From assembly GCF_040938485.1 (NCBI RefSeq), contig NW_027270978.1, positions 310,001 through 374,000 on the forward strand: DNA of 64,000 nucleotides, in the 5' to 3' direction. Below the pieces are notes generated by a model, which searched no databases, was not told the origin of the DNA, and was given only the letters and a program-made list of their open reading frames with translations. The position numbers were made by a program, and so were the translations under genes. Positions 5,441-30,250 of this stretch are shown one piece after another (position 1 is the first letter of the stretch; each line of letters opens with the position of its first letter). This stretch comes from Diadema antillarum. Lineage: Eukaryota.

Positions 5441-6205
5441 CTGTGACTCTAACGGTGAACTGGATGGTTTGCGGGATGTCGGAGACTCTCAGACGTGGGT
5501 TCAGCCTAATTCCTCCAGTGGTCGTATTCAGCAGCAGGTGATCCTGATCGTTTCCGTTGATGATTTCGTATTCCAGGGTGTCGGACTCATCGGGATCTGT
5601 CGCGGGTACCCTTCCAATATCTCCCTCCAGGAAGTATCCTTCATAGTTGTTGAAAAAGATCTCAAAGTCCCCAAGAATGGGTGCGTTGTCGTTGACGTCC
5701 GTCACCCTGATGTAAACCGTTGCTTCTGCGAAAAAAGGAACGTTGGTCGCATGGACGACCACCTCGTACTGGTTGCGGGCCTCGTAGTCGAACATCTCCA
5801 ACGACGTGATCAGTCCAGAATCTGGGTTGATCTCGAAGAAATCCTGGTCGCCTCTGACAATGGTATACTGGATGAGTGAATTGAACCCGGAGTCTGGATC
5901 GGTCGCTGTCAGTTTCATCACCTGCTCTCCGGGTATGCGATTCTCTCTGATCGTGACAAAGTATTCCCGTTCAGAAAACGACGGAGGATTGTCGTTGGTG
6001 TCCGTGATTTCCACATCGACCATCACCGAGGTGCTCAGCGATGGAACGCCTTGGTCGTAGGCATTAGCCACCAGGTGGTACTCGGCCCGAGACTCGCGGT
6101 CCAGCATGGAAGCGACACGGATGACCCCAGACGTTTCATCTATGGTAAACCGCCCACCTCCATCATTCCCGCCTTCAAATGTGTACTTGACTGCACTGTT
6201 CATTC
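5441..6205 (-). CDS. CELSR: CELSR/Flamingo copy A, coding exon 2 (rest of EC7, EC8, EC9 cadherin repeats)
   Basis: ORF 5346..6230 encodes LDRE, DxNDN and DPD cadherin motifs and the CELSR-type EC9 (FNNYEGYF..GRVPATDPD). Acceptor ctcag|GA at 6206/6205, donor ACAG|gtgag at 5441/5440; 765 nt, phase 1 to 1. Later exons are not in the window. Confidence 0.9.
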
Positions 6206-16085: not shown

Positions 16086-18963
16086 CCTGATCCGCATCTG
16101 ATGCAGAGATAGTGGTGATACTGGTGAGTGGAGCTGAGTTTTCTTGGATTTCTGCTTCATACTTCGCTGTGGCAAAGACAGGAGCATTATCATTGATGTC
16201 TTGTATGGTAATTTGCACAAATGCTCTGGACTGCTGGGGGATGTCGCCGTGGTCACTGGCGGTCACATACAGCGTATAATGGGACGTTGCTTCACGGTCT
16301 AGCTCCACTCGGGTGCGTATCTCTCCCGATTCTGCATTGATTTCAAACTCCGGTACATTATCCATGCTGTAGCTTATTTCCGCATTGGATCCCGCATCAT
16401 TGTCGGAGGCCGAGACTTGGACGACGACGTGGCCAATGGAAACCGACTCGCTGACGTACACATTATACGGTGAGTTCTGAAATACAGGAGCATAGTTGTT
16501 GACATCGGTAACATTCACAAGGACTAGACAGGTGCTGTCGTACTGTCCATCAGAAGCGGTGACTGTGAGAGAATAGAAAGATTTGGAATTGTAATTCAGC
16601 TGAGAGGTAACTTGAATAGCTCCCTCGTTGTTTTGGCTCCTGATGCCGAATGGGATGCGTCTGTTGGGGTCCTCTGAATCGGCAATCCTGTACGAAATGG
16701 TGTTCTGCTCATCAGGGTCTGTTGCCACGACAGTTAGGACTTCATAGCCGCTGAACACATCCTCTCTCACTGAACCTGTATATCTCTCCTGCGGAAATGT
16801 GGGAGGGTTATCATTTACATCGGTGACTGTGATCATGACTGAAGCCGTCGCACTCCGTGGAATCTCCCCACCATCAACGGCAAGGACGTTAAATTCCCAC
16901 TGGTGATTCAACTCACGATCAAGGTTGATGACTGTAGTGATGGCGCCTGATGTTGGTCCGATATCGAACGGAAAGTTGTTCGGAGGATTAGGGATTGAGA
17001 ATGTTATCCTAGCATTATCTCCTTCATCATCATCTCTTGCATTGACAGACAGAATCGAGTAGTCCACACCAACATCCTCTCTCACGATTCCCTGGTACAC
17101 ATTCTGGGTGAATTGGGGTCCATTGTCATTAACGTCAATGACAGTCACAGTGACAGTGGTAGTATTCTCCCGCGGTGGATTGCCAGAATCTTGGGCACGT
17201 ATAGTCAGACGGTAGCTTCTAGCAGTTTCAAAGTCGAGCGCATTCTGAAGTGACAGGTATCCGTTGTTGGAGTCAATTCGGAAGCGCCCTTCAAAATTGC
17301 CATACGTCAAGCTGTAGTGGACTTCAGCGTTTGCACCTATATCGGCATCTGTGGCGATGACATGGAGAATCTGACTACCAGGGTCGTGCGGACCAACATC
17401 TTCCCTGACCGACACCTCATATGATGCTTGTGAAAATTGGGGAGAGTTGTCGTTGACATCTAGAACTGTCAGGGACACTTCTGCTGTAGAATTTCTCCTC
17501 ATTGGATTTGTTCCCATATCCTGCGCCATCACAATCAAGTTGTACCGTTCAATGCGCTCTCTGTCAAGCCTTTCTCGTGTTTTGATTTCTCCACTAGAGG
17601 GATTGATTGTGAACACGTTGTTGGGGCTTTGGCTATTCACAATGCTATACCGAATATTTGCATTGTCCCCGATGTCCCCGTCTGAGGCCTGAACTCTGGT
17701 TATCAGTGTTCCCGGATTTTGACTTTCACTGGTGGTAATAACATAGCTGGGCTGCTCAAATATGGGGGTGTGGTCATTGCGATCGTCCACATAAATGGTC
17801 AGGTAGGTAGTGGCAGATTTTGGTGGTGTGCCACCGTCAGTCGCAGTGAGACGAAATGTGTGGGATTCTATCGTTTCTCTGTCAAGAGCCATTGTCGTCA
17901 CTATCAGACCTGTGTCTGGATTGATGTCAAACATGGCTCCACTCCGAGCATCTGACTGAGCTGTCATGCTGTAAGTGAGTTGGCCATTGACACCATCATC
18001 ATTGTCAGTTGCCGTGATCGTTATTACCACATATCCGGGATCCTCATTCTCTGGGACTCTCTGTGTGTACACAGTACTGCTGAATGAAGGGAAGGTGTTT
18101 CGGACCTGCCGTCTAAAACGATTCAAAACGACCTTGCCGTGGCCAGATTTATCTCCACGTGATTGGTCACTTCTTTGATCCTGGTCTGCTGCTTGCAGCT
18201 CAATTGATATTGGAATCACTTCATCTTCCTCATCCCCAGAGCGGTAAAACTGACCCCTCGATAAACACGACTCCGGTATGTGCATCGATCCAAGTACGCT
18301 CTCTGACTGGTGCTGCAAAACACACAAGATATCCTGCTCCATGGTCAGAATGCCGCTTTTGGGGTCAACACCAAGCTGGTTTGTGTTAGTGTCAAGAAGG
18401 TCATACACCACCGGGCATCCTTTTAGAGATGATGGAAGGAAACTTCTCAACTGTAGTAGGATATCTCCAATAAACCAACATGTTCCTTCGGGATACTCAA
18501 CAAGAATTTGCTGAGGCTGAGTTGCTGTTAATGGAGTATGGCCATGTTGAGAATCAAAATCTTTTTTCCTCGCTTTCCTTGGATGGCAGCCATTCCCATG
18601 AACATGAATGGCTATTGGCACCAATGTAGATGATGACAGGCCATTTTTCATTTCTGTTTGATCAGATCTAGTCCTGCTTGTTCGTGCTTGTACATACAAA
18701 GTGAAAGGATTCTCATGGAGTAAGCTACAGTCTAATTCGCCACTGAGCGATACATCCCCAGTGCTGCTGTCAATTTGAACACGTTCCTTCGCATCCTCAC
18801 CTGTCAAAGTTGGATGCAACACGTATGTCCACTCACCGCTTAACGAAATATTAAATATAGAAATGTCAGGTTCGAGAAATGTCGAGACGTGAACGTTAAA
18901 TGCGGCTAAAGCCGAGCTGTGGAAAACAGCCGCCACCCACAAGATGCGGAGAAGGGACGCCAT
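16086..18963 (-). CDS. CELSR: CELSR/Flamingo copy A, large coding exon 1 (signal peptide, prodomain, RFRR furin site, EC1-EC6, start of EC7)
   Basis: 994-aa ORF 16051..19035. Signal-like MASLLRILWVAAVFHSSALA (ATG 18963; another in-frame ATG at 18981), RFRR|QVRN, six DxNDN-type linkers, donor GATCAGG|gtaagt at 16086/16085 (phase 1). A single huge first exon is typical of CELSR genes. Confidence 0.92.
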
Positions 18964-20316
18964 AGCGCCCCGCAACATCATTTCAAATACCGCTCCGCCT
19001 GTCGGTACGTTGCGACGACAAACCGCAGAATTCACTCTGGCTTCTCTGCTCTGGCCACGATTTATGGTATCCGAGTCCCGATATATTCCATGAAACTAAA
19101 TCACATAATGTTTATCCATCCGGAGGCATCACGTAACATACTTCCATGGTGTTTGAAAAGTTTTCCGAGCACTTTATTAACCCTTATGTCCTGTCTTCCG
19201 ACTTCATAAATCCGTTTCCACAGAACACGACGTTCTCACGGGAAGTACCAACGGACGTATTAGCAGAAGAGCAGAGAGAAGCGTTCCTATTGGGAGGGCT
19301 TCGGCGCGGCGGTCGCCAGTAGAAGGGGCTGATGCATGTACCCCAAACGCTGGTGGTGGTAGAGCGCTCCAGTGATGCGGCACCGCAAGGAGATCCGAAA
19401 AACATCACATATCGCACAGTGTACGAAGTGGAGAAACGTATTCACTCTCCGTGTGTTGTCACAAGATGGCAGCATAGTGTATACGATTCGTATGTAATGA
19501 AGAGCGGTATCTAGTAATATGTTCAACTTTCTATTTTACAATGATCTGATCCAGGTATTGTTTGCCAGGAAATGAGAAGATAAATGGCAGACATTAGTTT
19601 TTGTTTGCCGAGAAGATAAACCTATAGCAAATCATCTTCTTTACTGCTATGTCGTGATTTCAGTGTTCACTAACTGTCAGAACTCAAACCCTACAATGTC
19701 AACATAGATAATAAACACAATAGTAGTAGTAGAGGTAGTAGTAGTAGTAGCGGTGCTCATTGCGCTTCAAAGAAGAAGAGGAGGAAATAATACACTAGTA
19801 CATTTTACAAACATGACAGCAGGGAAGGGGAAAAAACAAATACATACTAGTTGAGGAACATAATTTTTTGTTGTGGATTTTACATTATGGATTACAGTTA
19901 TGTAATCCTCAGTGTGACAAGAACAAATTACGTTTGGTTTGACTGTTTCTGTAGATGACAGTTGGTGTACCGGAATGTTATGTTGATTCCACAGTCTTGG
20001 TCCCATAAGGGAGAAAGCACGATCCCAATCCATGTTTTATTTTGGATGTTTGTTCGTAACAGTGCATCGGAAAAAAAAAAGCAGCAGGTATGAATATTTC
20101 AACCGTTAAAGTTTTGTGACATCTTTATTTGGAAGATTACAAAACAGCGAATTCGAAAAATCCAAATGAGAAGATGAAAAGCATGAAAAAACATTTCAGC
20201 TGTAGTTTCAGACAGAAACTTTCTTATAAGATTTAAACTTATTCCTACTGCAACCCTTTTATTCCCGATTGATTCCTTCCTCTTGTCAGAGTCTCTTTCA
20301 TACAGCCCTTTTTCAC

Positions 20317-20351
<35 letters not shown>

Positions 20352-21019
20352 TATTATTTTGTTTTTATATGTGCATATATATAATAATATTGTGTATATA
20401 TAATCATATATATCATGTACTAGTATATATTATATTCTACATTATATATATGCATATGCATGCATATCAACATATGCATACATCTGTCCTTTAGGATTTT
20501 TTGCTTTTCCCCTTTTTTCATATATAACTACTATTATCATAATTATTACTATTATCAATATTATTATCATTATTATTATTTTACATATACTTTGAAATGT
20601 TTGGTAACTTGAATTTGTTGGTTGACTCTCACTTTCATTTTGTTGCCTCTTCTTGGTACACCAGGTTAGGGCTCGCTGCTTGCTCAGCCTCCCCCCCCCC
20701 CCCTTATGCTGTTGCTACATTTCACTCTTTTCCTTTCTTTATCCCTCTGTTGTTCCTTATCTTGTTTGACTTTGCCTCCCTATTCATCCTTATATCCTTC
20801 TCATGGTCCTCTGGATCATCACTGACCCTCCTCTGCTTTTGTCTGTCCCCCCTCCTGCTTTAATTACCCTCCCTTCATGCCCTTTACCTGTTGGGCTCCT
20901 TGCCCAAGACCTCCAACCCGTCCCTTTTGTTATCTATGTACTGTGTCCCTAGCCCTCCCTGACTGTTCTTGTTGTGTGTAGTCCTTATGTGATTGCTTGC
21001 CCTGTCTGTTTGTCATTTT

Positions 21020-21058
21020 GCCTCTGACGAAGATTCTGCTAGGATTGAAAGCTCAGGC
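21020..21058 (+). ncRNA. Minimal type I hammerhead ribozyme motif (Penelope-like element type)
   Basis: GCCU-CUGACGA-A-GAUUCU/gcu/AGGAUU-GAAA-GC-UC-AGGC: core boxes, helix I, helix II and a palindromic AGCU in place of helix III. Confidence 0.6.
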
Positions 21059-21388
21059 CCCTTTTGACTCCATTTTTACTCCATGGCTCACTACTATTGG
21101 ATAAGTAGTTTTCAGCAGCTTTTTTTTTTATCCGCAAAACTTTAATCACGCAACTGATATCTAATATTCCTGATTTTTTTTTCACCTATGACTTCACAAC
21201 TGGTACCGTCAGTAAACCTTTCAAAATAATGAAATAGTAAAGACCGGAAAGAAAACAGTAAATTATCATTCGTGCAGAGGGGAGAAGATGGGCTGAAACC
21301 GAACAAAGCTATATACTGCAACTTTGGCTGAAGCCTAACAGATTTTAACAAAATATCACCCTCTAAAGTTTAAGATCGCAACTCCTGG

Positions 21389-21855
21389 TTTTACAATAAT
21401 CATTATCAACAAACATGTCGGAAAAACAATAGCAGTGAGATTTGAATCAGTCATCTACTGCTTTCTGGGCAGCGACACCACCATCGGGCTATCACTTGTT
21501 GCTGGCAGTGACTCGATAAACTTGGAATAGATACCCAAGATCTGACTTTATTACGTTGAAATTCTTATTCAATTAAAACTGGTCTAAGGCGTATATATAG
21601 GACGACATTCTTTTTTACAATTTAATTACAATTTTACAATAATCATTATCAACAAACATGTCGGAAAAACAATAGCAGTGAGATTTGAATCAGTCATCTA
21701 CTGCTTTCTGGGCAGCGACACCACCATCGGGCTATCACTTGTTGCTGGCAGTGACTCGATAAACTTGGAATAGATACCCAGGATCTGACTTTATTACGTT
21801 GAAATTCTTATTCAATTAAAACTGGTCTAAGGCGTATATATAGGACGACATTCTC
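21389..21855. repeat. Near-perfect tandem duplication, about 240 bp x2, containing a degenerate tRNA-like A/B-box segment on the - strand
   Basis: ttttacaataatcattatcaacaaacatgtcgg...taggacgacattc occurs twice; the reverse complement contains TAGCCCGATGG and GATTCAAATC. Confidence 0.8.
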
Positions 21856-22301
21856 TTTTTTTGGGGGGGGGGGGATAAATTCCATTACACCACATCTTCT
21901 CTCCTCTGCGTGAATAAGTTCGTTTAATAACTACAGGAGCCAATAAATCAAATCAAATTATGCTAGAAAATTAAAATATGTGGAATTATCACTTCATTTC
22001 CTTTATGTTGTTCAACAACTGACATCTCAAACTGTTGTAGTATACTCTAATCCAGCTATGGATTAAACTAAAGCTTTAAGAATTCATTATTTTTTTTATT
22101 AGTTACGGACTACATAATGTATCTTTGTTCCTAAAACTTCAATGTCTTCTCCTACGATATATTTGAAATCACTGCATCGGCATACATATACGAGGGTAAA
22201 TTCCCATTTTGATAGAAAGGGCACTTGGTAAGCTTTCTTGAATTATCAGAGATAATGGAACAGAAAATCATCAGAATCTTTATCTTCGAGATGGCTGTAT
22301 A

Positions 22302-22454
22302 CAGGGGTAGATCCAGGAATTCCGTAAAGGGGGTGGGGGCGCTTTTACAAAATTAAAGGGGCACGCCCCCTTTTTTTCTTTTTATTTCTTTTGTTAAAAA
22401 AATGATAATAATAAGGGGGGCACTCCCGGTGTGCTCCCCCTGGATCCGCCACTG
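22302..22454. mobile_element. Short MITE (CAGGGG..GATCCAG ends)
   Basis: caggggtagatccagg ... cctggatccgccactg inverted termini. Confidence 0.65.
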
Positions 22455-24756
22455 GTATAGCAACTTGTCTGCAACCAATTAAGGTTTTGATTTGTTGATA
22501 GTTTTTTTTTTCGTCTGTATCACATTTAATTCGATGTATAATTATCGTAAGGTGCTACAATCATCAGTGTACATTCTTTTATCCTACATACTTTTACACA
22601 CCTTATTTTCTATTATTAAAAAAGTGATGTTTGTATATTCTTGTCGAAAAATGAAATAAAAATAGAAAATTGAATTGAAATTTACTGTGCTCTATATGGC
22701 AGACGTCAAGCTGAACTCAGTCAAGCGAATTTCTCATCCACCTGAATACGATGTTAAAGTTGAAGTTGTGCTCTCATTGCTTTTTTCTTTGATGAACTTC
22801 CCAAAGAAGATGTTCCCCACATTAAGTTTATAAGGATTACTGTTGACAATAATCGCTTGGAAATTCCAAGTCGGTAATATGTGCATATAGACCCCACAGT
22901 TATACCTCTAAACACTGGTGTTGTAAAACACAGATAGTTTCACCGCCAATTACTCCGCTACCCTGATTTCACTCTATTTACTTTATGGCTTGTTGACTTG
23001 GGGTAACATTCGTCATTTTTTCCAATGCTGCGATGCTTAGTAATAGACAGATTACGCCTCTTACAAAAACAACAGCAAACAAACAAACAGAGCAAAACAA
23101 AAACACACTCCGCATTATGTTTATCTCTTTCAGACGATCTCACACAGACTCACTTTTTTTTTCTTATTGAAAAAAAAATGAATGTTAAAAATGAAAGATT
23201 TATATTATTTCGACAAGGACCGTTTATGTTTATATCGGAGACAGCACTTCACCTGCCTTACTTACTACGTTTCATACAAATCTGTCAATTCATAAACATC
23301 CTACTAGGCGACTTGGAGAATAAAATTTACCTTTGTTACTGGTCACTGTTAGCGTAAAACACGTTCATTATACATGATTGGCCAAGATTTCGTAAAGCAC
23401 TGAGTGATGATATTAAAACTTGCTGTAAAAGCAAACTGAAGTGAATATTTTCGCAATCTTATGAATAAGTAATAATTTCGTGGATATATTAGTACGACAA
23501 AGATATTCGTATTTTGTGATCTGTGCATTTGACTCACTGTACCATCGTTGACCATCTGTCTTTCCTCTCTTCTTATTTTTCCTTCCTTCTCTCTTTTCTC
23601 AACTCGCCGTTTTCTTTGTATCTTATTCGTACTTACAGGTGCATGTGTCTTTGCTCATGTATCTGTTTTGTTATATCCTGTTAGTAAGTCTCGTCTCTGC
23701 CGGATTTATACACTTTATTTAGTTTAATCGCCCCCCTAAACAATATGGCATATTTTTGAATACATGATTAATTAGCTCAATGATTCTGTTTCAGTTTCAG
23801 TAAGTTTTATTTCTCCACTTGTATAAAAAATAGGTATGACAATATCAAACATATTATTCACAAGTCATGAAAATATAAACAAGAGTTCACATCACAAATA
23901 TACAATCATGTAAAATAATACATATATTTCACAGCAAATCTAAATCTTTAAATATAGGTGGAGGAGACCGTTATCAATAAGCGAATCGCTTGACTTGGAC
24001 AACGGCCTAAAAAATAATTAAGTAACGTACAGAATTTGGTGACCACGCAACTTTGTTTTGTTGGGGTTGTTTTTAATGTATGTATATTGACTGGAGGAAC
24101 TCACAATCTTCAAGCTTCATTTTTTAGTGGGTCCCAATCTCACTCCAAAACTTATAGTTATCAATCACTGAAATAATGTCTCACTTCTTAATTCTCATCA
24201 AATGTATGATATACCCTGCTATCCTATCATACTCATTTTTTATTTTTTTCCCTTTTTATTAACATTGTACGTTTGTGCTATTTATTATGTTGCAGATGGA
24301 GAAAAATAAATCTGAACTTGAACTTTAATTGCTGCTCATCGTGCACCTTCGGTTGATTTTGAGTTCCTCTCTATAACATTATCTGAATTCACTTACGCGT
24401 TGTGTAAGAAAATTACTATCAAACATACTCTGCTTTTTTTCACATCTCTTGTCTGTTCCGGAAATTTCGTATACCATCACTCTTCTACCACGCAACACAT
24501 ACTGCACTTGTTTGGTCGCTTCCCTGTTAATGGGAATGTATTGTTTTTAAACACATGCACGTTCTTCGTGGACCTGTATCATTTGTATTTTTGTTTGCCA
24601 AGGTGAAGTAAAACAAGGAATAGTTCGAATGTTCTCAATGACTTTTGACGAGTTTTATAGGAATTAGATATCACACACTGTTATGGTCTTGTTACTACGT
24701 AAACCTTGATGGACCGCTTGAATGAATTTAAATGCAGACAAACAACACAAACTTAC

Positions 24757-25738
24757 CCGCATCAACATCCAAAGCAGTTATTGTCATGAAACTGGAGGAA
24801 ATAAGGCTGTTTTCTTCAATTTCTCCTTCATAATGTGATGAAGCAAAAACAGGCGGGTTATCGTTTATGTCTTGAATGAAAATTTGAATGATTGCCCTGG
24901 ACTGCTGGGGGATATCTCCATGGTCACTGGCAGTCACAGTTAATGTATAGTGGGACACTGTTTCACGGTCTAGCTGCAAGCGGGTGTGTACCTCTCCTGA
25001 ATTTTCATTGATTTCAAACTCAGGTACATCATCCATGCTGTAGCTTATTTCAGCGTTGGAACCCGCATCACCATCGGAGGCCGAAACTTGAACAACAACA
25101 TTGCCAATGGGAACAGATTCACTAACGAACGCACTGTAAGTCGAGTTTTGGAAAATAGGTGCGTCATTCCTTGTATCTGTAATCTGACTCGTTATATTTA
25201 CAGGGATGGGCTGCTCAAATATGGGGGTGTGGTCATTGCGATCGTCAACATAAACGGTCAGGTGGGTGGTGGTAGCTTTTGGTGGTGTGCCGTGGTCAGT
25301 CGCAGTGAGACGAAATGTGTGGGATTCTATCGTTTCTCTGTCGAGAGCCATTGTCGTCATTATCAGACCTGTGTCTGGATTGATGTCAAACATGGCTCCA
25401 CTCCGAGCATCCGATTGAGCCGTCATGCTGTAGGTGAGTCGGCCGTTGTCACCATCATCATTGTCGGTTGCCGTGATCGTTGTCACGATATATCCAGGAT
25501 CCTCATTTTCAGGAACTCTCCGTACATACAACATGCTGTCAAACGAGGGGTTGGTATTTTGGACCTGTCGTCTGTATCGGTCCGAAACAAGTTTACTATG
25601 ACCAGACATCTCCCAAAGTGGCCTCACTCTTGTTTGACTTGTACTTTGTCTAAAATGTCCCACATGGACATTGAAGGTGGCAAAACTTTCGCCGTGTAGA
25701 ATGGTAGCAACTACCACCAAACCGAACAGGAACAACAT
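24757..25738 (-). CDS. CELSR copy B: orphan miniaturised exon 1 (signal peptide, short prodomain, RYRR, EC1, EC6, start of EC7); candidate alternative first exon of copy A
   Basis: Open frame of 327 codons + 1 nt, homologous to A exon 1 with two in-frame deletions. Canonical donor GATGCGG|gtaagt at the same position and phase as A. No exon-2 homolog between 19000 and 24750. Confidence 0.75.
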
Positions 25739-26378
25739 CACGACCCCTGTTGGAATCTCCCAAACACTAAAAATCAGTTTGTGTAATAAACACAGTATTA
25801 GTTGCCTGCAACAAATGTCGCACAATTAGAATGATTGAAACAATTATGATGGTACCTTGTTTTCATACTAAACATGCACACACTAGATAAAATCAGAAAG
25901 AGATTGTGGAGAGAGCGATTGGTTATTTTCTGCGAGGAGAGGTAATCTGAGAGGTAGGCTCCGCCCACAAAGTTCTTCCAAACTCGCCCATTGGCTCAAA
26001 TCAAGCCTGAAGTTTGTAAGAGACGGTTGTACGCTCCCCGGTGATTTGTCAGTGTCACGTTCTCTTGGTGCGCCCCCATGGAGTCGTACGCAGAGCAGAC
26101 CGGCGGAGGAAAGAGACTTTCTCCTACCAGATACAGCTTGCACTTGCATCACCTGTGACGAGTTTTAAAGCGGAATTTCGTGATAGCAGGCTGCTCAAAA
26201 GCCTTGGAAGACGAAACGCATTGCTTTCAATTCCAGTTTGAAGAACTGACTTACTTTGTCGGAACATTTCGATCAGCGAGATGACCAAATCATAATATTA
26301 TGTGACGCTTGCTGGAGGCCACGGATGCTGCCGAACATCAACTAAAGTCAAGTGGAAGAAAATTTATCGGGAGCCGTG
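25739..26378. promoter_or_regulatory. Putative bidirectional promoter between head-to-head mini exons B and C
   Basis: 640 nt between divergent ATGs; non-repetitive; GC box ctccgccc near 25960. Confidence 0.45.
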
Positions 26379-27348
26379 ATGTCGTATCTGTTCTCTTTGT
26401 TGGTGGTTGCTGCCATTTTGCATGGCGAAGTTTTTGCAGCCTTTAACGTTAATGCGGCAGAGTTTAGACAGAGTATAATTAGAAGTCAGAAGAGGAAAAT
26501 CTTGTCCGATAAACTTGTTTCTCATCGATACAGACGACAGGTTCAAAATACCAATCCTTCGTTTGACAGCACGATCTATGTACGAAGAGTTCCTGAAAAT
26601 GAGGATCCTGGGTATGTTGTGACAACGATGACGGCAACCGACAATGATCATGGCGACAACGGGCGGCTCACCTACAGCATGACGGCTCAATCGGATGCTC
26701 GGAGTGGAGCCATGTTTGACATCAATCCAGACACAGGTCTGATAGTGACAACAGTTGCTCTCGACAGAGAAACGATAGAGTCTCATACATTTCGTGTCAC
26801 TGCAACTGACCACGGCACACCACCAAAATCTGAAACCACCAACCTGACCATTCATGTGGACGATCGCAATGACCACAACCCCATATTTGAGCAGCCCATC
26901 CCTGTAAATATAACGAGTCAGGTTACAGATACAAGGAGTGACGCACCTATTTTCCAAAACTCGACTTACAGTGTGTCCGTCAGTGAATCTGTTCCCATTG
27001 GTCATGTTATTGTTCAAGTTTCAGTCTCTGGTGGTGATGCAGGATCCAATGCTGAAATAAGCTTCAGCATGGATGATGTACCGGAGTTTGAAATCAATGA
27101 ACATTCAGGAGAAGTACACACCCGTTTGCAGCTGGACCGTGAAACAGTGTCTCAATATGTATTAACTGTAACTGCCACTTACCATGGAGATATCCCCCAG
27201 CAGTCCAGCGCAAGCCTTCAAATTTCCATTGAAGATATCAATGATAATCCACCTATCTTTCCTACATCGCATTATGAAGGAGAAATTGAAGAGAACTGCC
27301 CTCTTTACTCCTCTGTGCTGACAATAACTGCTTTGGATGCTGATGCAG
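26379..27348 (+). CDS. CELSR-like copy C, exon 1 (miniaturised, same architecture as B)
   Basis: ORF 26352..27371; signal-like MSYLFSLLVVAAILHGEVFA, RYRR|QVQN, EC1 and EC6. The donor at the homologous position is GCAG|gcaaat (GC, non-canonical). Confidence 0.8.
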
Positions 27349-27734
27349 GCAAATTTCTGTTGTTTGTATAAGATTTTTACAATAATTTGGATTTTGACCC
27401 AGAAGATTGATTCCCATCGCTTTAAAGGCAGCTTTGTCGTATTTCTTGTTTGTTTGTTTGTTTGTTATTGTTTTTTCAAAAAAGAAAAAGTTCTCTTTTT
27501 TATGTACAGGTATGGAGTGGGGAAGACACATCATAGATAAAATAATGATACCAAACTTTTTATTTGGCAATAAAAATGACCCATTTTTCAATGCCGTGAT
27601 ATTGGCATGCACATACAACATACAGACTGAAATAAAAAGGAAGCTAGTCATATGTGGATTTACTTAACATGAAACAATACTCCAGTATCTTTTTCAGATG
27701 TAATTCTCTACAAATATATATACTCTGCAGTGAA

Positions 27735-27738
27735 TATA

Positions 27739-27788
<50 letters not shown>
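27735..27788. repeat. (TA)n microsatellite
   Basis: Direct reading. Confidence 0.9.
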
Positions 27789-27793
<5 letters not shown>

Positions 27794-28067
27794 CTGAAAT
27801 TGTTTAGGAGTGCTTCAAAAAGCTAAAAGATGCACTTTACTCCTGGTGTCCACCCTACTTTTAGTGACACAATTCATGATACACTGAGGAGTTGGATTAA
27901 TGCTTTACAGATGAGATTGAAGATCAAATATAGCTTTGAAGAATTCTGTGCATAATGACAGCACACAAGAGAGTACCCCAAACAGTAGAAATTTAACAGT
28001 GCTGCTGAACACTGAAAATTTTGAATGTGCGTGTGTGTGTTCATAGCAATGCATGAAGATGCTACTA

Positions 28068-29183
28068 CAGTACGTATCAAAATAAACGCAACAAGATTTG
28101 ATTTAAAAATTGTGAAGATTGTGTTTACACCAAAGTGAGTAGCAACATCTTAAAACCACATATCTCCTCTTTCCAATGATATCTTATTCATTCGTACACG
28201 GTCATGGATGGCTGAGTAATCATTCTTTTTGGACAAAGAGTCAAATTGGACTTGGGACCAAGTTTAGGCACTGCAAGAATCAGTGCACCTTATTAGAAAT
28301 TAACTAAACAAACGGAATAATGAAATTAATTTTAATGACATTAATGATCACAATTAATGAAATTAATGAAATTAATGATCGAAACTTACCATTGTCTTCT
28401 TTCGGATACTAGTATCTCTTTTTAACATTACATCCCATGCCCCTCAACATGGCCACCATTTCTTTCCACACAAAGATTAGCTCTTTTCTCCATCTCACGC
28501 ACAGCCCTGGGAATCATTTGGGCTTGGTGGCGTAGAGCTTCAAACTCATCAGTGATTCTTTGTCTCAGAGTTGCAATGTCAGGTGGAGGGGTAATGAACA
28601 CTTTGCTCTTGAGATAACCCAAAAGAAAAAAGTCACAAGTAAGATCCGGAGATCGTGGTGGCCACTCCACATCATGATACAAGGCAATCACCCGATTTCC
28701 AAATACCTCAGCCAATCTGTTTCTTACTGCAACTAGTCGATCGGCTGGTGCGCCATCCTGTGCCCGCCATATAGGCATCTGAACACACTCCTTTGTTGCA
28801 CAGGAAAATTTTCCATTAATTCAGGTATCACATTTCATTTAAAATTTGTAAGTATCCATTTCCGTTCATGTTGTTTTCAAAGAAGAAGGGCCCTAGGAGC
28901 AAACCGTTCCACAAAATCCAGAACAGACATTCAGCTTTTCTCTACGAAAATCGACGTCATAGTTGAATGCAGAAACTGAAACTTGGTCCCAAGTCCAATT
29001 TGACCCACTGTCCAAAAAGAATGATTACTCAGCCATCCATGACCGAGTAAGAATAAATAAGATATCATTGGAAAGAGGAGATATGTGGCTTTAAGATGTT
29101 GCTACTCGCTTTGTTGTAAAGTTAACACAATCTTCACAAATTTGAAATTAAATCTTGTTGCGTTTTTTTTTAAATACGCACTG
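28068..29183 (-). mobile_element. Internally deleted Tc1/mariner element (DD41D/rosa-like, about 200-bp TIRs) in intron 1 of copy C
   Basis: TA|CAGT...ACTG|TA ends; long TIRs 28068-~28265 and ~28979-29183; transposase remnant QDGAPA..WPPRSPDLT-CDFFLLGYLK in ORF 28428..28778. Confidence 0.9.
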
Positions 29184-29484
29184 TATATGTTGTTACCTAG
29201 TATACACAATGCACTGAATGCTTCACCTTATGCTCATTTAATGACCGTGCACTATTCTATATAGGCCTACCTGCAAAAACTGAAGACTTCTGTTTTAGTT
29301 TAATGACATATTCATCTCTTGACTGTCCATGATATTACAAGGAAATGATTATTATAAGAACTACAGGTAATATAGAACTCAGTTTTGGGTAAAAAGAAGA
29401 GAAATCTGTAATAATGATGGATTTTTATTCAATCTAAAGCAGTTCTAGTCTCTTCTCTTATTACTATTTTTTTTTTTTTTGCAG

Positions 29485-30250
29485 GATCAAATGGTGAAGT
29501 AAGGTATACTTTTGAAGGAGGCTCTGATGCAGATGGGCGGTTCATCATAGATGAGATGTCGGGCACTGTTCGTGTCGCCTTATTGCTGGACCGCGAGTCA
29601 GGGGCTGAGTATGAGTTGGTGGCATATGCTTATGACCAAGGTATTCCTTCATTGAGAACGGCAGTGCAAATCACTGTGGAAATCCTCGACGTCAATGACA
29701 ATCCACCATCATTTACCCGGAAGGAGTACTTCTTCACAGTCAAGGAGAATCGTGTTCCAGGGGAATGGGTGGGTGAAGTGACTGCCCTTGATCCGGATTC
29801 CCTAGATAATGGCCATATCAGGTACACCATCTTGGATGAAGATCTTTTCCCTTTTGAGGTACATTATGCGTCCGGGATGATCACTACACTGGATATACTT
29901 GACTATGAATCTCGCAGAGAGTATGAGCTTGTCATTCGCGCTATCAATGTACCATATTTTGCTGATGTGATCGTTCACATCGGTGTGACGGATTACAATG
30001 ATAATATGCCTATTCTGTATGACTTTATGATTTTTTTTGAATAGCTATGAAGGTATCTTTTATGAAGGTGATGTCGGAAAGGTGCCTGCAACAGATCCTG
30101 ACATTTCAGATGTGCTGTGGTACTCTATTATACGCGGAAACGACAACTATCATCTAATCTTGAATGAATCGACAGGTGGAATAAGGCTTAACCCGTATCT
30201 CCGCAGACGACTCCTACCTCAGACTATTGAATTCATAGTACAAGCATCTG
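29485..30250 (+). CDS. CELSR-like copy C, exon 2 (EC7-EC9), interrupted by a +1 T at 30031-30038
   Basis: Acceptor gcag|GA, donor TCTG|gtgagg. 766 nt versus 765 nt in A exon 2. ORFs 29556..30044 and 30037..30267 join if one T is removed. Confidence 0.85.

What the first reader, a model, noticed from the sequence alone, without database searches (positions are those of the whole stretch)
24757..25738. Orphan exon B is positioned and phased to be an alternative first exon of CELSR copy A
Seen: B lies 5.8 kb upstream of A on the same strand and has its own ATG, signal peptide and RYRR site. It has an uninterrupted frame and a canonical GTAAGT donor in phase 1, at exactly the codon where A exon 1 ends (DVDAG versus DADQG). 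No exon 2 of its own follows it. The intron start is also homologous (A gtaagtttgt-atttaaatttcat; B gtaagtttgt[13 nt]atttaaattcat), which indicates DNA-level duplication. Inference: splicing to the A exon 2 acceptor at 6205, across an intron of about 18.5 kb that skips A exon 1, gives an in-frame short CELSR. This resembles the variable-first-exon/constant-exon logic established for clustered protocadherins.
Basis: partly seen in the sequence, partly recalled or inferred. Interest (0 to 1): 0.8.

Follow-up and report, generated by a model that had tools for sequence, protein, structure and literature searches.

The report
Spare CELSR first exon, use unproven
In the sea urchin Diadema antillarum, an intact extra copy of a shortened CELSR (Flamingo) first exon lies upstream of the full-length receptor gene and could splice in frame to its second exon, but no RNA data were available to show that it does.

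Summary
Exon B (25738..24757, minus strand) has an ATG, a signal peptide, an RYRR site, two cadherin repeats plus the first part of a third, and a G|GTAAGT donor in phase 1. Joining it to the A exon-2 acceptor at 6205 reads through in frame. No cadherin exon lies between B and A exon 1.

B's closest relative is not A exon 1. It is exon 1 of the head-to-head paralog C (26379..27347, plus strand; 86% nt identity). B and C1 are the arms of a 1-kb inverted repeat around a 622-nt spacer. The arrangement is kept in both D. antillarum haplotypes and in D. setosum. The phase match to A exon 2 is therefore inherited and is not independent evidence of use.

The middle of B is homogenised with C1 and A1 by gene conversion. 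Even so, B has no stop or indel in three sequences, whereas noncoding flanks carry about 1 indel per 100 nt. Changes unique to B are biased toward synonymous in D. antillarum.

B-to-A2 splicing could not be tested: no RNA run was listed. RefSeq models B as a separate gene three times and never joins it to A. My estimate is about 0.35 that B is a real alternative first exon of A. The scan holds other first-reader notes on this same window.

The parts
24757..25738 (-). Exon B. ATG at 25738, signal peptide, RYRR site, EC1, a 13-aa junction, the last full cadherin repeat of A exon 1, and 35 residues of a split repeat. The last base, G at 24757, is in phase 1.
24726..24756 (-). B donor GTAAGT and the intron start. 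These 31 nt are identical in both D. antillarum haplotypes and in D. setosum. Read-through gives GKFVLFVCI and a stop at 24730-24728.
25748..26369 (.). A 622-nt spacer between the inverted arms B and C1. It is a candidate shared (bidirectional) promoter. It carries two CCAAT boxes in B orientation about 180 and 255 nt upstream of the B ATG. The two species are 93% identical here.
   Evidence: promoter role is inferred
26379..27348 (+). Exon 1 of paralog C (C1), the other arm of the inverted repeat. It has the same short architecture as B. Its donor in this haplotype is G|GCAAAT.
16086..18981 (-). Exon 1 of the canonical CELSR gene A. It encodes 965 aa with six cadherin repeats and the start of a seventh. 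The donor G|GTAAGT is in phase 1.
5441..6205 (-). A exon 2. The acceptor AG is at 6207-6206, the exon enters and leaves in phase 1, and the donor GT is at 5440-5439. It completes the split cadherin repeat.
19036..24756 (-). The B-to-A1 interval. It holds no cadherin-like exon. D. setosum carries a 10.2-kb transposon insertion at the point matching window position about 23685.

Best explanation
The window is from Diadema antillarum. Exon B is one arm of an old inverted duplication of the shortened first exon shared with the head-to-head paralog C. The two arms, B and C1, flank a 622-nt spacer that probably holds a shared promoter.

B has been kept as an intact coding first exon. It retains the signal peptide, a furin-type RYRR site, all calcium-binding motifs and a consensus phase-1 donor. 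Two forces appear to maintain it: purifying selection, and ongoing gene conversion with C1 and A1.

B stops in the middle of a cadherin domain and has no exon 2 of its own. The only partner in cis that completes that domain in frame is exon 2 of gene A. I therefore take the most likely function to be an alternative first exon. Transcripts starting at the spacer would splice 24757 to 6205 and remove A exon 1 as intron. The product would be about 2,396 aa with five cadherin repeats (EC1, EC6-9) instead of nine, and without the roughly 270-aa region that precedes the RFRR site in A.

Shown: the anatomy, the conservation, the gene conversion and the in-frame junction. Inferred: promoter activity, transcription through A exon 1, and the B-to-A2 splice itself.
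For: 1. Anatomy and in-frame junction.
2. B and C1 form an inverted repeat (arms 24738-25747 and 26370-27367).
3. The same arrangement, with B intact, occurs in D. setosum (L001) and in the second D. antillarum haplotype (L004). The 31 nt at the donor are identical in all three.
4. There are no indels in 982 nt of B, against 20 gap events in 1,996 nt of aligned noncoding flank. About 9.8 would be expected (P about 5e-5).
5. The unconverted ends (codons 1-49 and 286-328) have stayed open over dS of about 0.58 from C1, with only one in-frame 12-nt indel. Under neutrality P(no frameshift) is about 4e-5.
6. Changes unique to B relative to A1 and C1 have N:S of 14:11 (window haplotype) and 12:14 (other haplotype), against about 3.4:1 expected if neutral.
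7. B changes more slowly than C1 at the protein level (9 versus 20 unique changes, p = 0.04).
8. The exon ends inside a cadherin repeat. C shows that a short exon 1 followed by an exon 2 gives a long open frame (1,454 aa).
9. The D. setosum RefSeq model uses the B donor.
Against: 1. There is no RNA evidence. No sequencing run was listed, and no Diadema transcript fragments turned up in two word searches.
2. Three RefSeq models treat B as a separate gene: 293 aa and 336 aa read-through models in D. antillarum, and a 314-aa model in D. setosum spliced to another exon. D. antillarum was annotated with 12 adult-tissue RNA-seq runs (PMC13511894), yet B was not joined to A.
3. Two of these models start at Met43 and so lack the signal peptide.
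4. B is no better conserved at the nucleotide level than its flanks (93.4% versus 92.5-93.9%).
5. In the unconverted ends, B's pN/pS of 0.60 cannot be told from 1.
6. In D. setosum the B-unique changes look neutral (14 N: 4 S).
7. Gene conversion from selected paralogs can mimic constraint.
8. No B-like exon lies within 10 kb upstream of A1 in Lytechinus pictus.
Confidence: 0.35

Rival explanations
1. B is a non-functional leftover of the inverted duplication. Repeated gene conversion from the selected paralogs C1 and A1 keeps it looking intact. Any transcription is by-product divergent transcription from C's promoter, and no B-containing protein matters.
For: Gene conversion tracts are evident. 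Species-specific shared sites sit at codons 124-282. D. setosum B and C1 are 97-100% identical over codons 150-270. A C1-like tract is polymorphic in B of the second haplotype. B's total divergence equals that of its flanks. The unconverted ends give pN/pS of 0.60, not significant. D. setosum B-unique changes are 14 N: 4 S. No annotation joins B to A.
Against: The ends show orthology-type site patterns rather than conversion, yet they kept the ATG, signal peptide, RYRR site, frame and donor over dS of about 0.58. D. antillarum changes unique to B cannot have been imported from A1 or C1, and they are still biased toward synonymous. All calcium-binding motifs are intact in the three B sequences, while the window-haplotype C1 has lost some.
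Confidence: 0.27
2. B is a small gene of its own. It would encode a secreted protein of two cadherin repeats that ends by read-through into the intron (336 aa, tail GKFVLFVCI), or, in D. setosum, in a transposon-borne 33-aa exon.
For: This is how RefSeq models it in both haplotypes and in D. setosum. The 31 nt that encode the read-through tail are identical in all three sequences. PolyA-like hexamers lie 430-510 nt downstream of the donor.
Against: The product would end with a 35-residue fragment of a cadherin repeat that cannot fold alone. Two of the three models start at Met43 and lack the signal peptide. The D. setosum 3' exon lies in a 10.2-kb insertion with terminal inverted repeats and a 3-bp target duplication. 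It is therefore derived and cannot be the ancestral partner. Conservation of the tail cannot be separated from conservation of the donor.
Confidence: 0.2
3. B is spliced to something else: a cryptic exon in the B-A1 interval, or an acceptor just upstream of or inside A exon 1.
For: In D. setosum the modelled partner is simply the first good acceptor downstream.
Against: The AG sites just upstream of the A1 ATG lack a pyrimidine tract, and read from phase 1 they run into stops (read by eye). No conserved coding-like block lies in the interval.
Confidence: 0.1

Closest known systems
Clustered protocadherin (Pcdh alpha/gamma) and UGT1A variable-first-exon / constant-exon loci
   Same: Paralogous first exons lie on one strand upstream of shared downstream exons. 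Each has its own ATG and signal peptide. Their donors are in the same phase, so any of them would splice in frame to the first shared exon. The downstream first exon would be removed as intron.
   Different: There are only two candidate first exons here. They encode only the N-terminal part of the ectodomain, not a whole ectodomain plus transmembrane segment. B's promoter would be shared head-to-head with another gene. No conserved promoter element or splicing has been shown. B arose as an inverted copy of the neighbouring gene's exon, not by tandem expansion.
Inverted-repeat (palindrome) arms that evolve in concert by gene conversion, as in sex-chromosome palindromes
   Same: Two arms of about 1 kb flank a short spacer. 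Site patterns group the copies by species rather than by copy, and near-identical tracts occur within one species.
   Different: The arms are short and limited to one exon. Their ends escape conversion. A third partner in direct orientation, A exon 1, also exchanges sequence with them.
Alternative-promoter isoforms with shortened ectodomains (for example alpha- versus beta-neurexins)
   Same: A second promoter would give the same receptor body with a much shorter extracellular part.
   Different: In this locus the short form would come from an upstream duplicated exon, not from an internal promoter, and it is unproven.

Membership tests
Variable-first-exon / constant-exon gene organisation (clustered protocadherin type) | Two or more paralogous first exons on the same strand upstream of shared exons | tested here: met
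   B (25738-24757) and A1 (18981-16086) are both on the minus strand, upstream of A exon 2 at 6205.
Variable-first-exon / constant-exon gene organisation (clustered protocadherin type) | Each first exon is spliced to the first constant exon in mature mRNA | not testable with these tools
   No sequencing run was listed. No transcript fragments were found. RefSeq models do not join B to A.
Variable-first-exon / constant-exon gene organisation (clustered protocadherin type) | Donor phase is compatible with the constant-exon acceptor | tested here: met
   Donor and acceptor are both phase 1, and G|GA gives Gly. The match is inherited from A1 and C1.
Variable-first-exon / constant-exon gene organisation (clustered protocadherin type) | Each variable exon has its own promoter | tested here: inconclusive
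   The 622-nt spacer has CCAAT boxes and is shared head-to-head with C1. It is no more conserved than its flanks. There are no start-site data.
Variable-first-exon / constant-exon gene organisation (clustered protocadherin type) | Each variable exon encodes a whole ectodomain plus transmembrane segment | tested here: not met
   B encodes only a signal peptide, pro-region, two cadherin repeats and a fragment of a third.
CELSR/Flamingo first exon | Signal peptide, cadherin repeats, and homology to exon 1 of a gene with cadherin, EGF, laminin-G and further domains | tested here: met
   Pfam finds Cadherin twice in B. B is 85.5% and 76.5% identical at the nt level to A1 segments. A's product is 3,034 aa with Cadherin, CELSR2_9th and Laminin_G hits, and with further families that the output did not list.
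Pseudogenised (dead) exon | Stop codons, frameshifts, or loss of the start codon or splice site | tested here: not met
   None is present in the window haplotype, the second haplotype or D. setosum.
Pseudogenised (dead) exon | Neutral ratio of non-synonymous to synonymous change | tested here: inconclusive
   pN/pS is 0.42 overall and 0.60 (not significant) in the unconverted ends. B-unique N:S is 14:11 and 12:14 in D. antillarum but 14:4 in D. setosum. Gene conversion confounds these ratios.
Inverted repeat under concerted evolution | Reverse-complement arms whose copies are more alike within a species than orthologs are between species over part of their length | tested here: met
   The arms are 858 nt at 89% plus 109 nt at 75%. 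Sixteen sites group by species at codons 124-282. D. setosum B and C1 are 97-100% identical at codons 150-270.

The most novel reading that the evidence does not exclude
A sea-urchin CELSR locus uses a duplicated, shortened first exon as a second, independently promoted start. One adhesion-GPCR body would then be made with either a nine-cadherin or a five-cadherin ectodomain. The short first exon exists as a head-to-head pair that serves two genes from one bidirectional promoter: A through B, and the 7TM-less paralog C through C1. Gene conversion keeps the two alike. This would be a minimal protocadherin-like choice system outside the protocadherins.
Probability: 0.2. Interest if true: 0.7.

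Novelty: new member of a known kind. Interest (0 to 1): 0.42.

Why it matters
If B really feeds into gene A, a planar-polarity and adhesion receptor would gain a second ectodomain form through choice of first exon. That principle is so far tied mainly to clustered protocadherins and UGT1A, and this locus would show it at its simplest two-exon stage. Even without that, the locus is a clean natural example of three paralogous first exons exchanging sequence by gene conversion. One of them has been kept open for a long time with no annotated partner. The practical lesson for annotation is that all three RefSeq models of B are probably wrong at one or both ends.

Tried and rejected
1. RNA evidence. 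The look-up of sequencing runs on exon B listed no run, so read laying had no valid run id and was not used.

2. Transcript fragments in the protein collection. The search with B found only the genome-derived models. The search with A exon 2 found nothing above 79% identity.

3. Search with A exon 1, meant to recover protein ids for paralog C so that long proteins with a B-like N-terminus could be searched. C was not among the 120 hits listed. Proteins of about 2,400 aa, the size of a B-A2 isoform, therefore could not be searched. The absence of such a model in the results means nothing.

4. The 'VNSAV' upstream of the A1 ATG resembles the 'MNSAV' that starts exon 2. I rejected it as chance because the codons differ.

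5. An in-frame acceptor into A exon 1 from B. None was found by eye.

6. The bacterial-type promoter/terminator scan of the spacer is irrelevant for a eukaryote and found nothing.

7. PolyA hexamers downstream of B are frequent, as expected in AT-rich DNA, and do not discriminate between readings.

8. I considered whether the D. setosum 3' exon could be B's ancestral partner. I rejected this because the exon lies inside an insertion with terminal inverted repeats and a target-site duplication.

9. The large representative search was not run. Giant multi-repeat cadherins would swamp the top hits, and it carries no names or genomic context.

Full report
**What and where.** The window is part of contig JBFRCO010000090.1 of assembly GCA_040938485.1. 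This is Diadema antillarum, a largely uncollapsed diploid assembly annotated by NCBI with 12 adult-tissue RNA-seq runs (PMC13511894). Three related pieces lie together:
- Gene A is a canonical CELSR/Flamingo on the minus strand. Its exon 1 spans 18981..16086, its exon 2 spans 6205..5441, and its RefSeq product is 3,034 aa.
- Exon B lies at 25738..24757 on the minus strand.
- Gene C is a head-to-head paralog on the plus strand. Its exon 1 (C1) spans 26379..27348 and its exon 2 starts at 29485. Its product is 1,380 aa in this haplotype and 1,454 aa in the other haplotype and in D. setosum.

**Check of the observation.** All sequence statements are right.
- B opens at ATG 25738 and runs 327 codons without a stop.
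- It encodes a signal peptide homologous to those of A1 and C1, an RYRR site, two Pfam cadherin domains and the first 35 residues of a third. It ends ...DVDA-G|GTAAGT in phase 1.
- A exon 1 ends ...DADQ-G|GTAAGT in the same phase, and the intron starts are homologous as quoted.
- The A exon-2 acceptor is cag|GAATGAACAG at 6205, so the B-A2 junction reads G-MNSAVKYTF in frame.
- tblastn finds no cadherin-like exon between B and A1.
- The distances are 5,776 nt from B to the A1 ATG and 18,551 nt for the proposed intron.

**What B is.** B's closest relative is C1, not A1. The match is 85.8% nt over 1,005 nt and 78.6% aa over all 327 residues, on the opposite strand.
- The two are the arms of an inverted repeat (24738-25747 and 26370-27367) around a 622-nt spacer.
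- Homology starts about 9 nt before the ATG and stops about 20 nt into the intron.
- Both arms carry the same two deletions relative to A1. One removes the roughly 270-aa region before the RFRR site. The other removes EC2 to most of EC5, leaving EC1, a 13-aa junction, EC6 and the start of EC7.
- A exon 2 and C exon 2 are saturated at synonymous sites (pS 0.72-0.75). The unconverted ends of B and C1 have pS of about 0.41. The B/C1 duplication is therefore younger than the A/C duplication, and the short architecture predates it.
- It follows that B's donor phase, its position at the DxDxG codon and the homologous intron start are inherited. They are not independent evidence of use.

**Conservation.**
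- D. setosum (L001, chromosome OZ188187.1) has the same arrangement: C1, a 601-nt spacer, then B. B is open from the same ATG, and the 31 nt around the donor are identical.
- The second D. antillarum haplotype (L004) also has B intact.
- No B-like exon lies within 10 kb upstream of the A1 ortholog in Lytechinus pictus.

**Is B under selection?** The picture is mixed, and gene conversion confounds it.
- Among the four sequences compared (B and C1 from each species), sites that group by copy sit at codons 1-47 and 288-328. Sites that group by species sit at codons 124-282.
- D. setosum B and C1 are 97-100% identical at codons 150-270.
- A C1-like tract is polymorphic in B of the second haplotype, and an A1-like block is present in D. 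antillarum B. This agrees with the earlier first-reader note on a conversion-like tract.
- B's total divergence between species (6.6%) equals that of its noncoding flanks (6-7.5%; other noncoding blocks 5-10%).
- pN/pS between orthologs is 0.42 overall (p = 0.0009) but 0.60 (not significant) in the unconverted ends.

Other results point to constraint.
- There are no indels in 982 nt across three sequences, against 20 gap events in 1,996 nt of aligned flank (P about 5e-5).
- The unconverted ends have stayed open, with the ATG, signal peptide, RYRR site and donor, over dS of about 0.58. Under neutrality P(no frameshift) is about 4e-5 and P(no stop) is about 0.08.
- Changes unique to B relative to both A1 and C1 cannot have been imported from either. 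Their N:S is 14:11 and 12:14 in D. antillarum, against about 3.4:1 if neutral, but 14:4 in D. setosum.
- B has fewer unique amino-acid changes than C1 (9 versus 20, p = 0.04). It keeps every calcium-binding motif, while the window-haplotype C1 has lost some.

I put the chance that B is, or recently was, a selected coding exon at about 0.6.

**What B could join to.**
- B ends inside a cadherin repeat, so any product without a matching exon 2 carries a fragment that cannot fold.
- C shows that a short exon 1 followed by an exon 2 gives a long open frame.
- On B's strand, the only exon that completes the repeat in phase is A exon 2.
- A1 has no convincing acceptor upstream of its ATG. A transcript started at the spacer would therefore hold two donors (24757 and 16086) and one acceptor (6205). 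Use of the cap-proximal donor would give the short receptor, as in protocadherin clusters. That comparison rests on established knowledge, not on a test here.

**Existing annotation does not support the join.**
- RefSeq has B as its own gene three times. P0001 (293 aa) runs from Met43 and reads through to the intronic stop, in this haplotype. XP_071495274.1 (336 aa) runs from ATG1 and reads through, in the other haplotype. XP_072174156.1 (314 aa, D. setosum) runs from Met43 and is spliced at DVDAG to a 33-aa exon 5.9 kb downstream.
- That D. setosum exon lies in a 10.2-kb insertion absent from D. antillarum. The insertion is bounded by terminal inverted repeats (ACACTAAGAAAAAA.../...TTTTTTCTTAGTGT) and a 3-bp target duplication, so it is derived.
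- The D. setosum model suggests, but does not prove, that the B donor is used there.
[quoted passage not shown] Gene A itself is modelled as a fragment (1,248 aa) on the second haplotype. The annotation is therefore weak negative evidence.

**RNA evidence.** No sequencing run was listed for exon B, so read laying could not be used. Word searches with B and with A exon 2 gave no Diadema transcript fragments. Proteins the size of a B-A2 isoform were outside the length range of every query I could reference. No literature on CELSR alternative first exons of this kind was found.

| Reading | Estimate |
|---|---|
| B is an alternative first exon of A | 0.35 |
| B is a relic kept intact by gene conversion | 0.27 |
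| B is a stand-alone truncated product | 0.20 |
| B has some other splice partner | 0.10 |

The new points are these: B is the inverted twin of C1; the three first exons exchange sequence; and the phase match is inherited. Other first-reader notes on this same window (s1-229746, s1-229771, s1-229972) describe the same locus.

Noticed in passing
window 27349-27354: In this haplotype the donor of C exon 1 is G|GCAAAT, a GC donor with a weak +5. The second D. antillarum haplotype and D. setosum both have G|GTAAAT.
   Followed up: partly
window 30031-30038: C exon 2 carries a run of eight T where the other haplotype has ATATTTTT. This 1-nt excess shifts the frame (DFMIFFE-stop versus DFEIFLNSYEG in the other haplotype and D. 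setosum). It probably explains the 1,380-aa versus 1,454-aa RefSeq products. It could be a real disabled allele or a homopolymer error.
   Followed up: partly
window 26379-27348: The window-haplotype C1 has lost conserved cadherin residues (SASDGD to SVSGGD, SDHG to TYHG). Together with the GC donor and the frameshift, this suggests that the C allele on this haplotype is decaying.
   Followed up: no
window 25360-27750 versus L004: The two D. antillarum haplotypes differ by 6-11% across the C1 intron, C1 and the spacer. From inside exon B (last difference at 25360) onward they are 99-100% identical. In the C1 intron the window haplotype is closer to D. setosum (93.9%) than to the other haplotype (88.7%). 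Possible causes are deep coalescence, introgression or conversion.
   Followed up: partly
window 27769-29449: About 1.7 kb of C intron 1 is present in this haplotype and absent from the other (L004 position 7977).
   Followed up: no
L001 11919-22094 (D. setosum): A 10.2-kb insertion with 14-nt terminal inverted repeats containing CACTA and a 3-bp target duplication. It has no long ORF and carries the 33-aa exon that RefSeq attaches to B.
   Followed up: partly
window 21389-21860: A 243-nt unit is repeated 1.9 times at 99% identity in the B-A1 interval.
   Followed up: no
window 25905-26000 (minus strand): Two CCAAT boxes (gagCCAATggg, aaCCAATcgc) lie about 255 and 180 nt upstream of the B ATG in the spacer shared with C1.
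   Followed up: no
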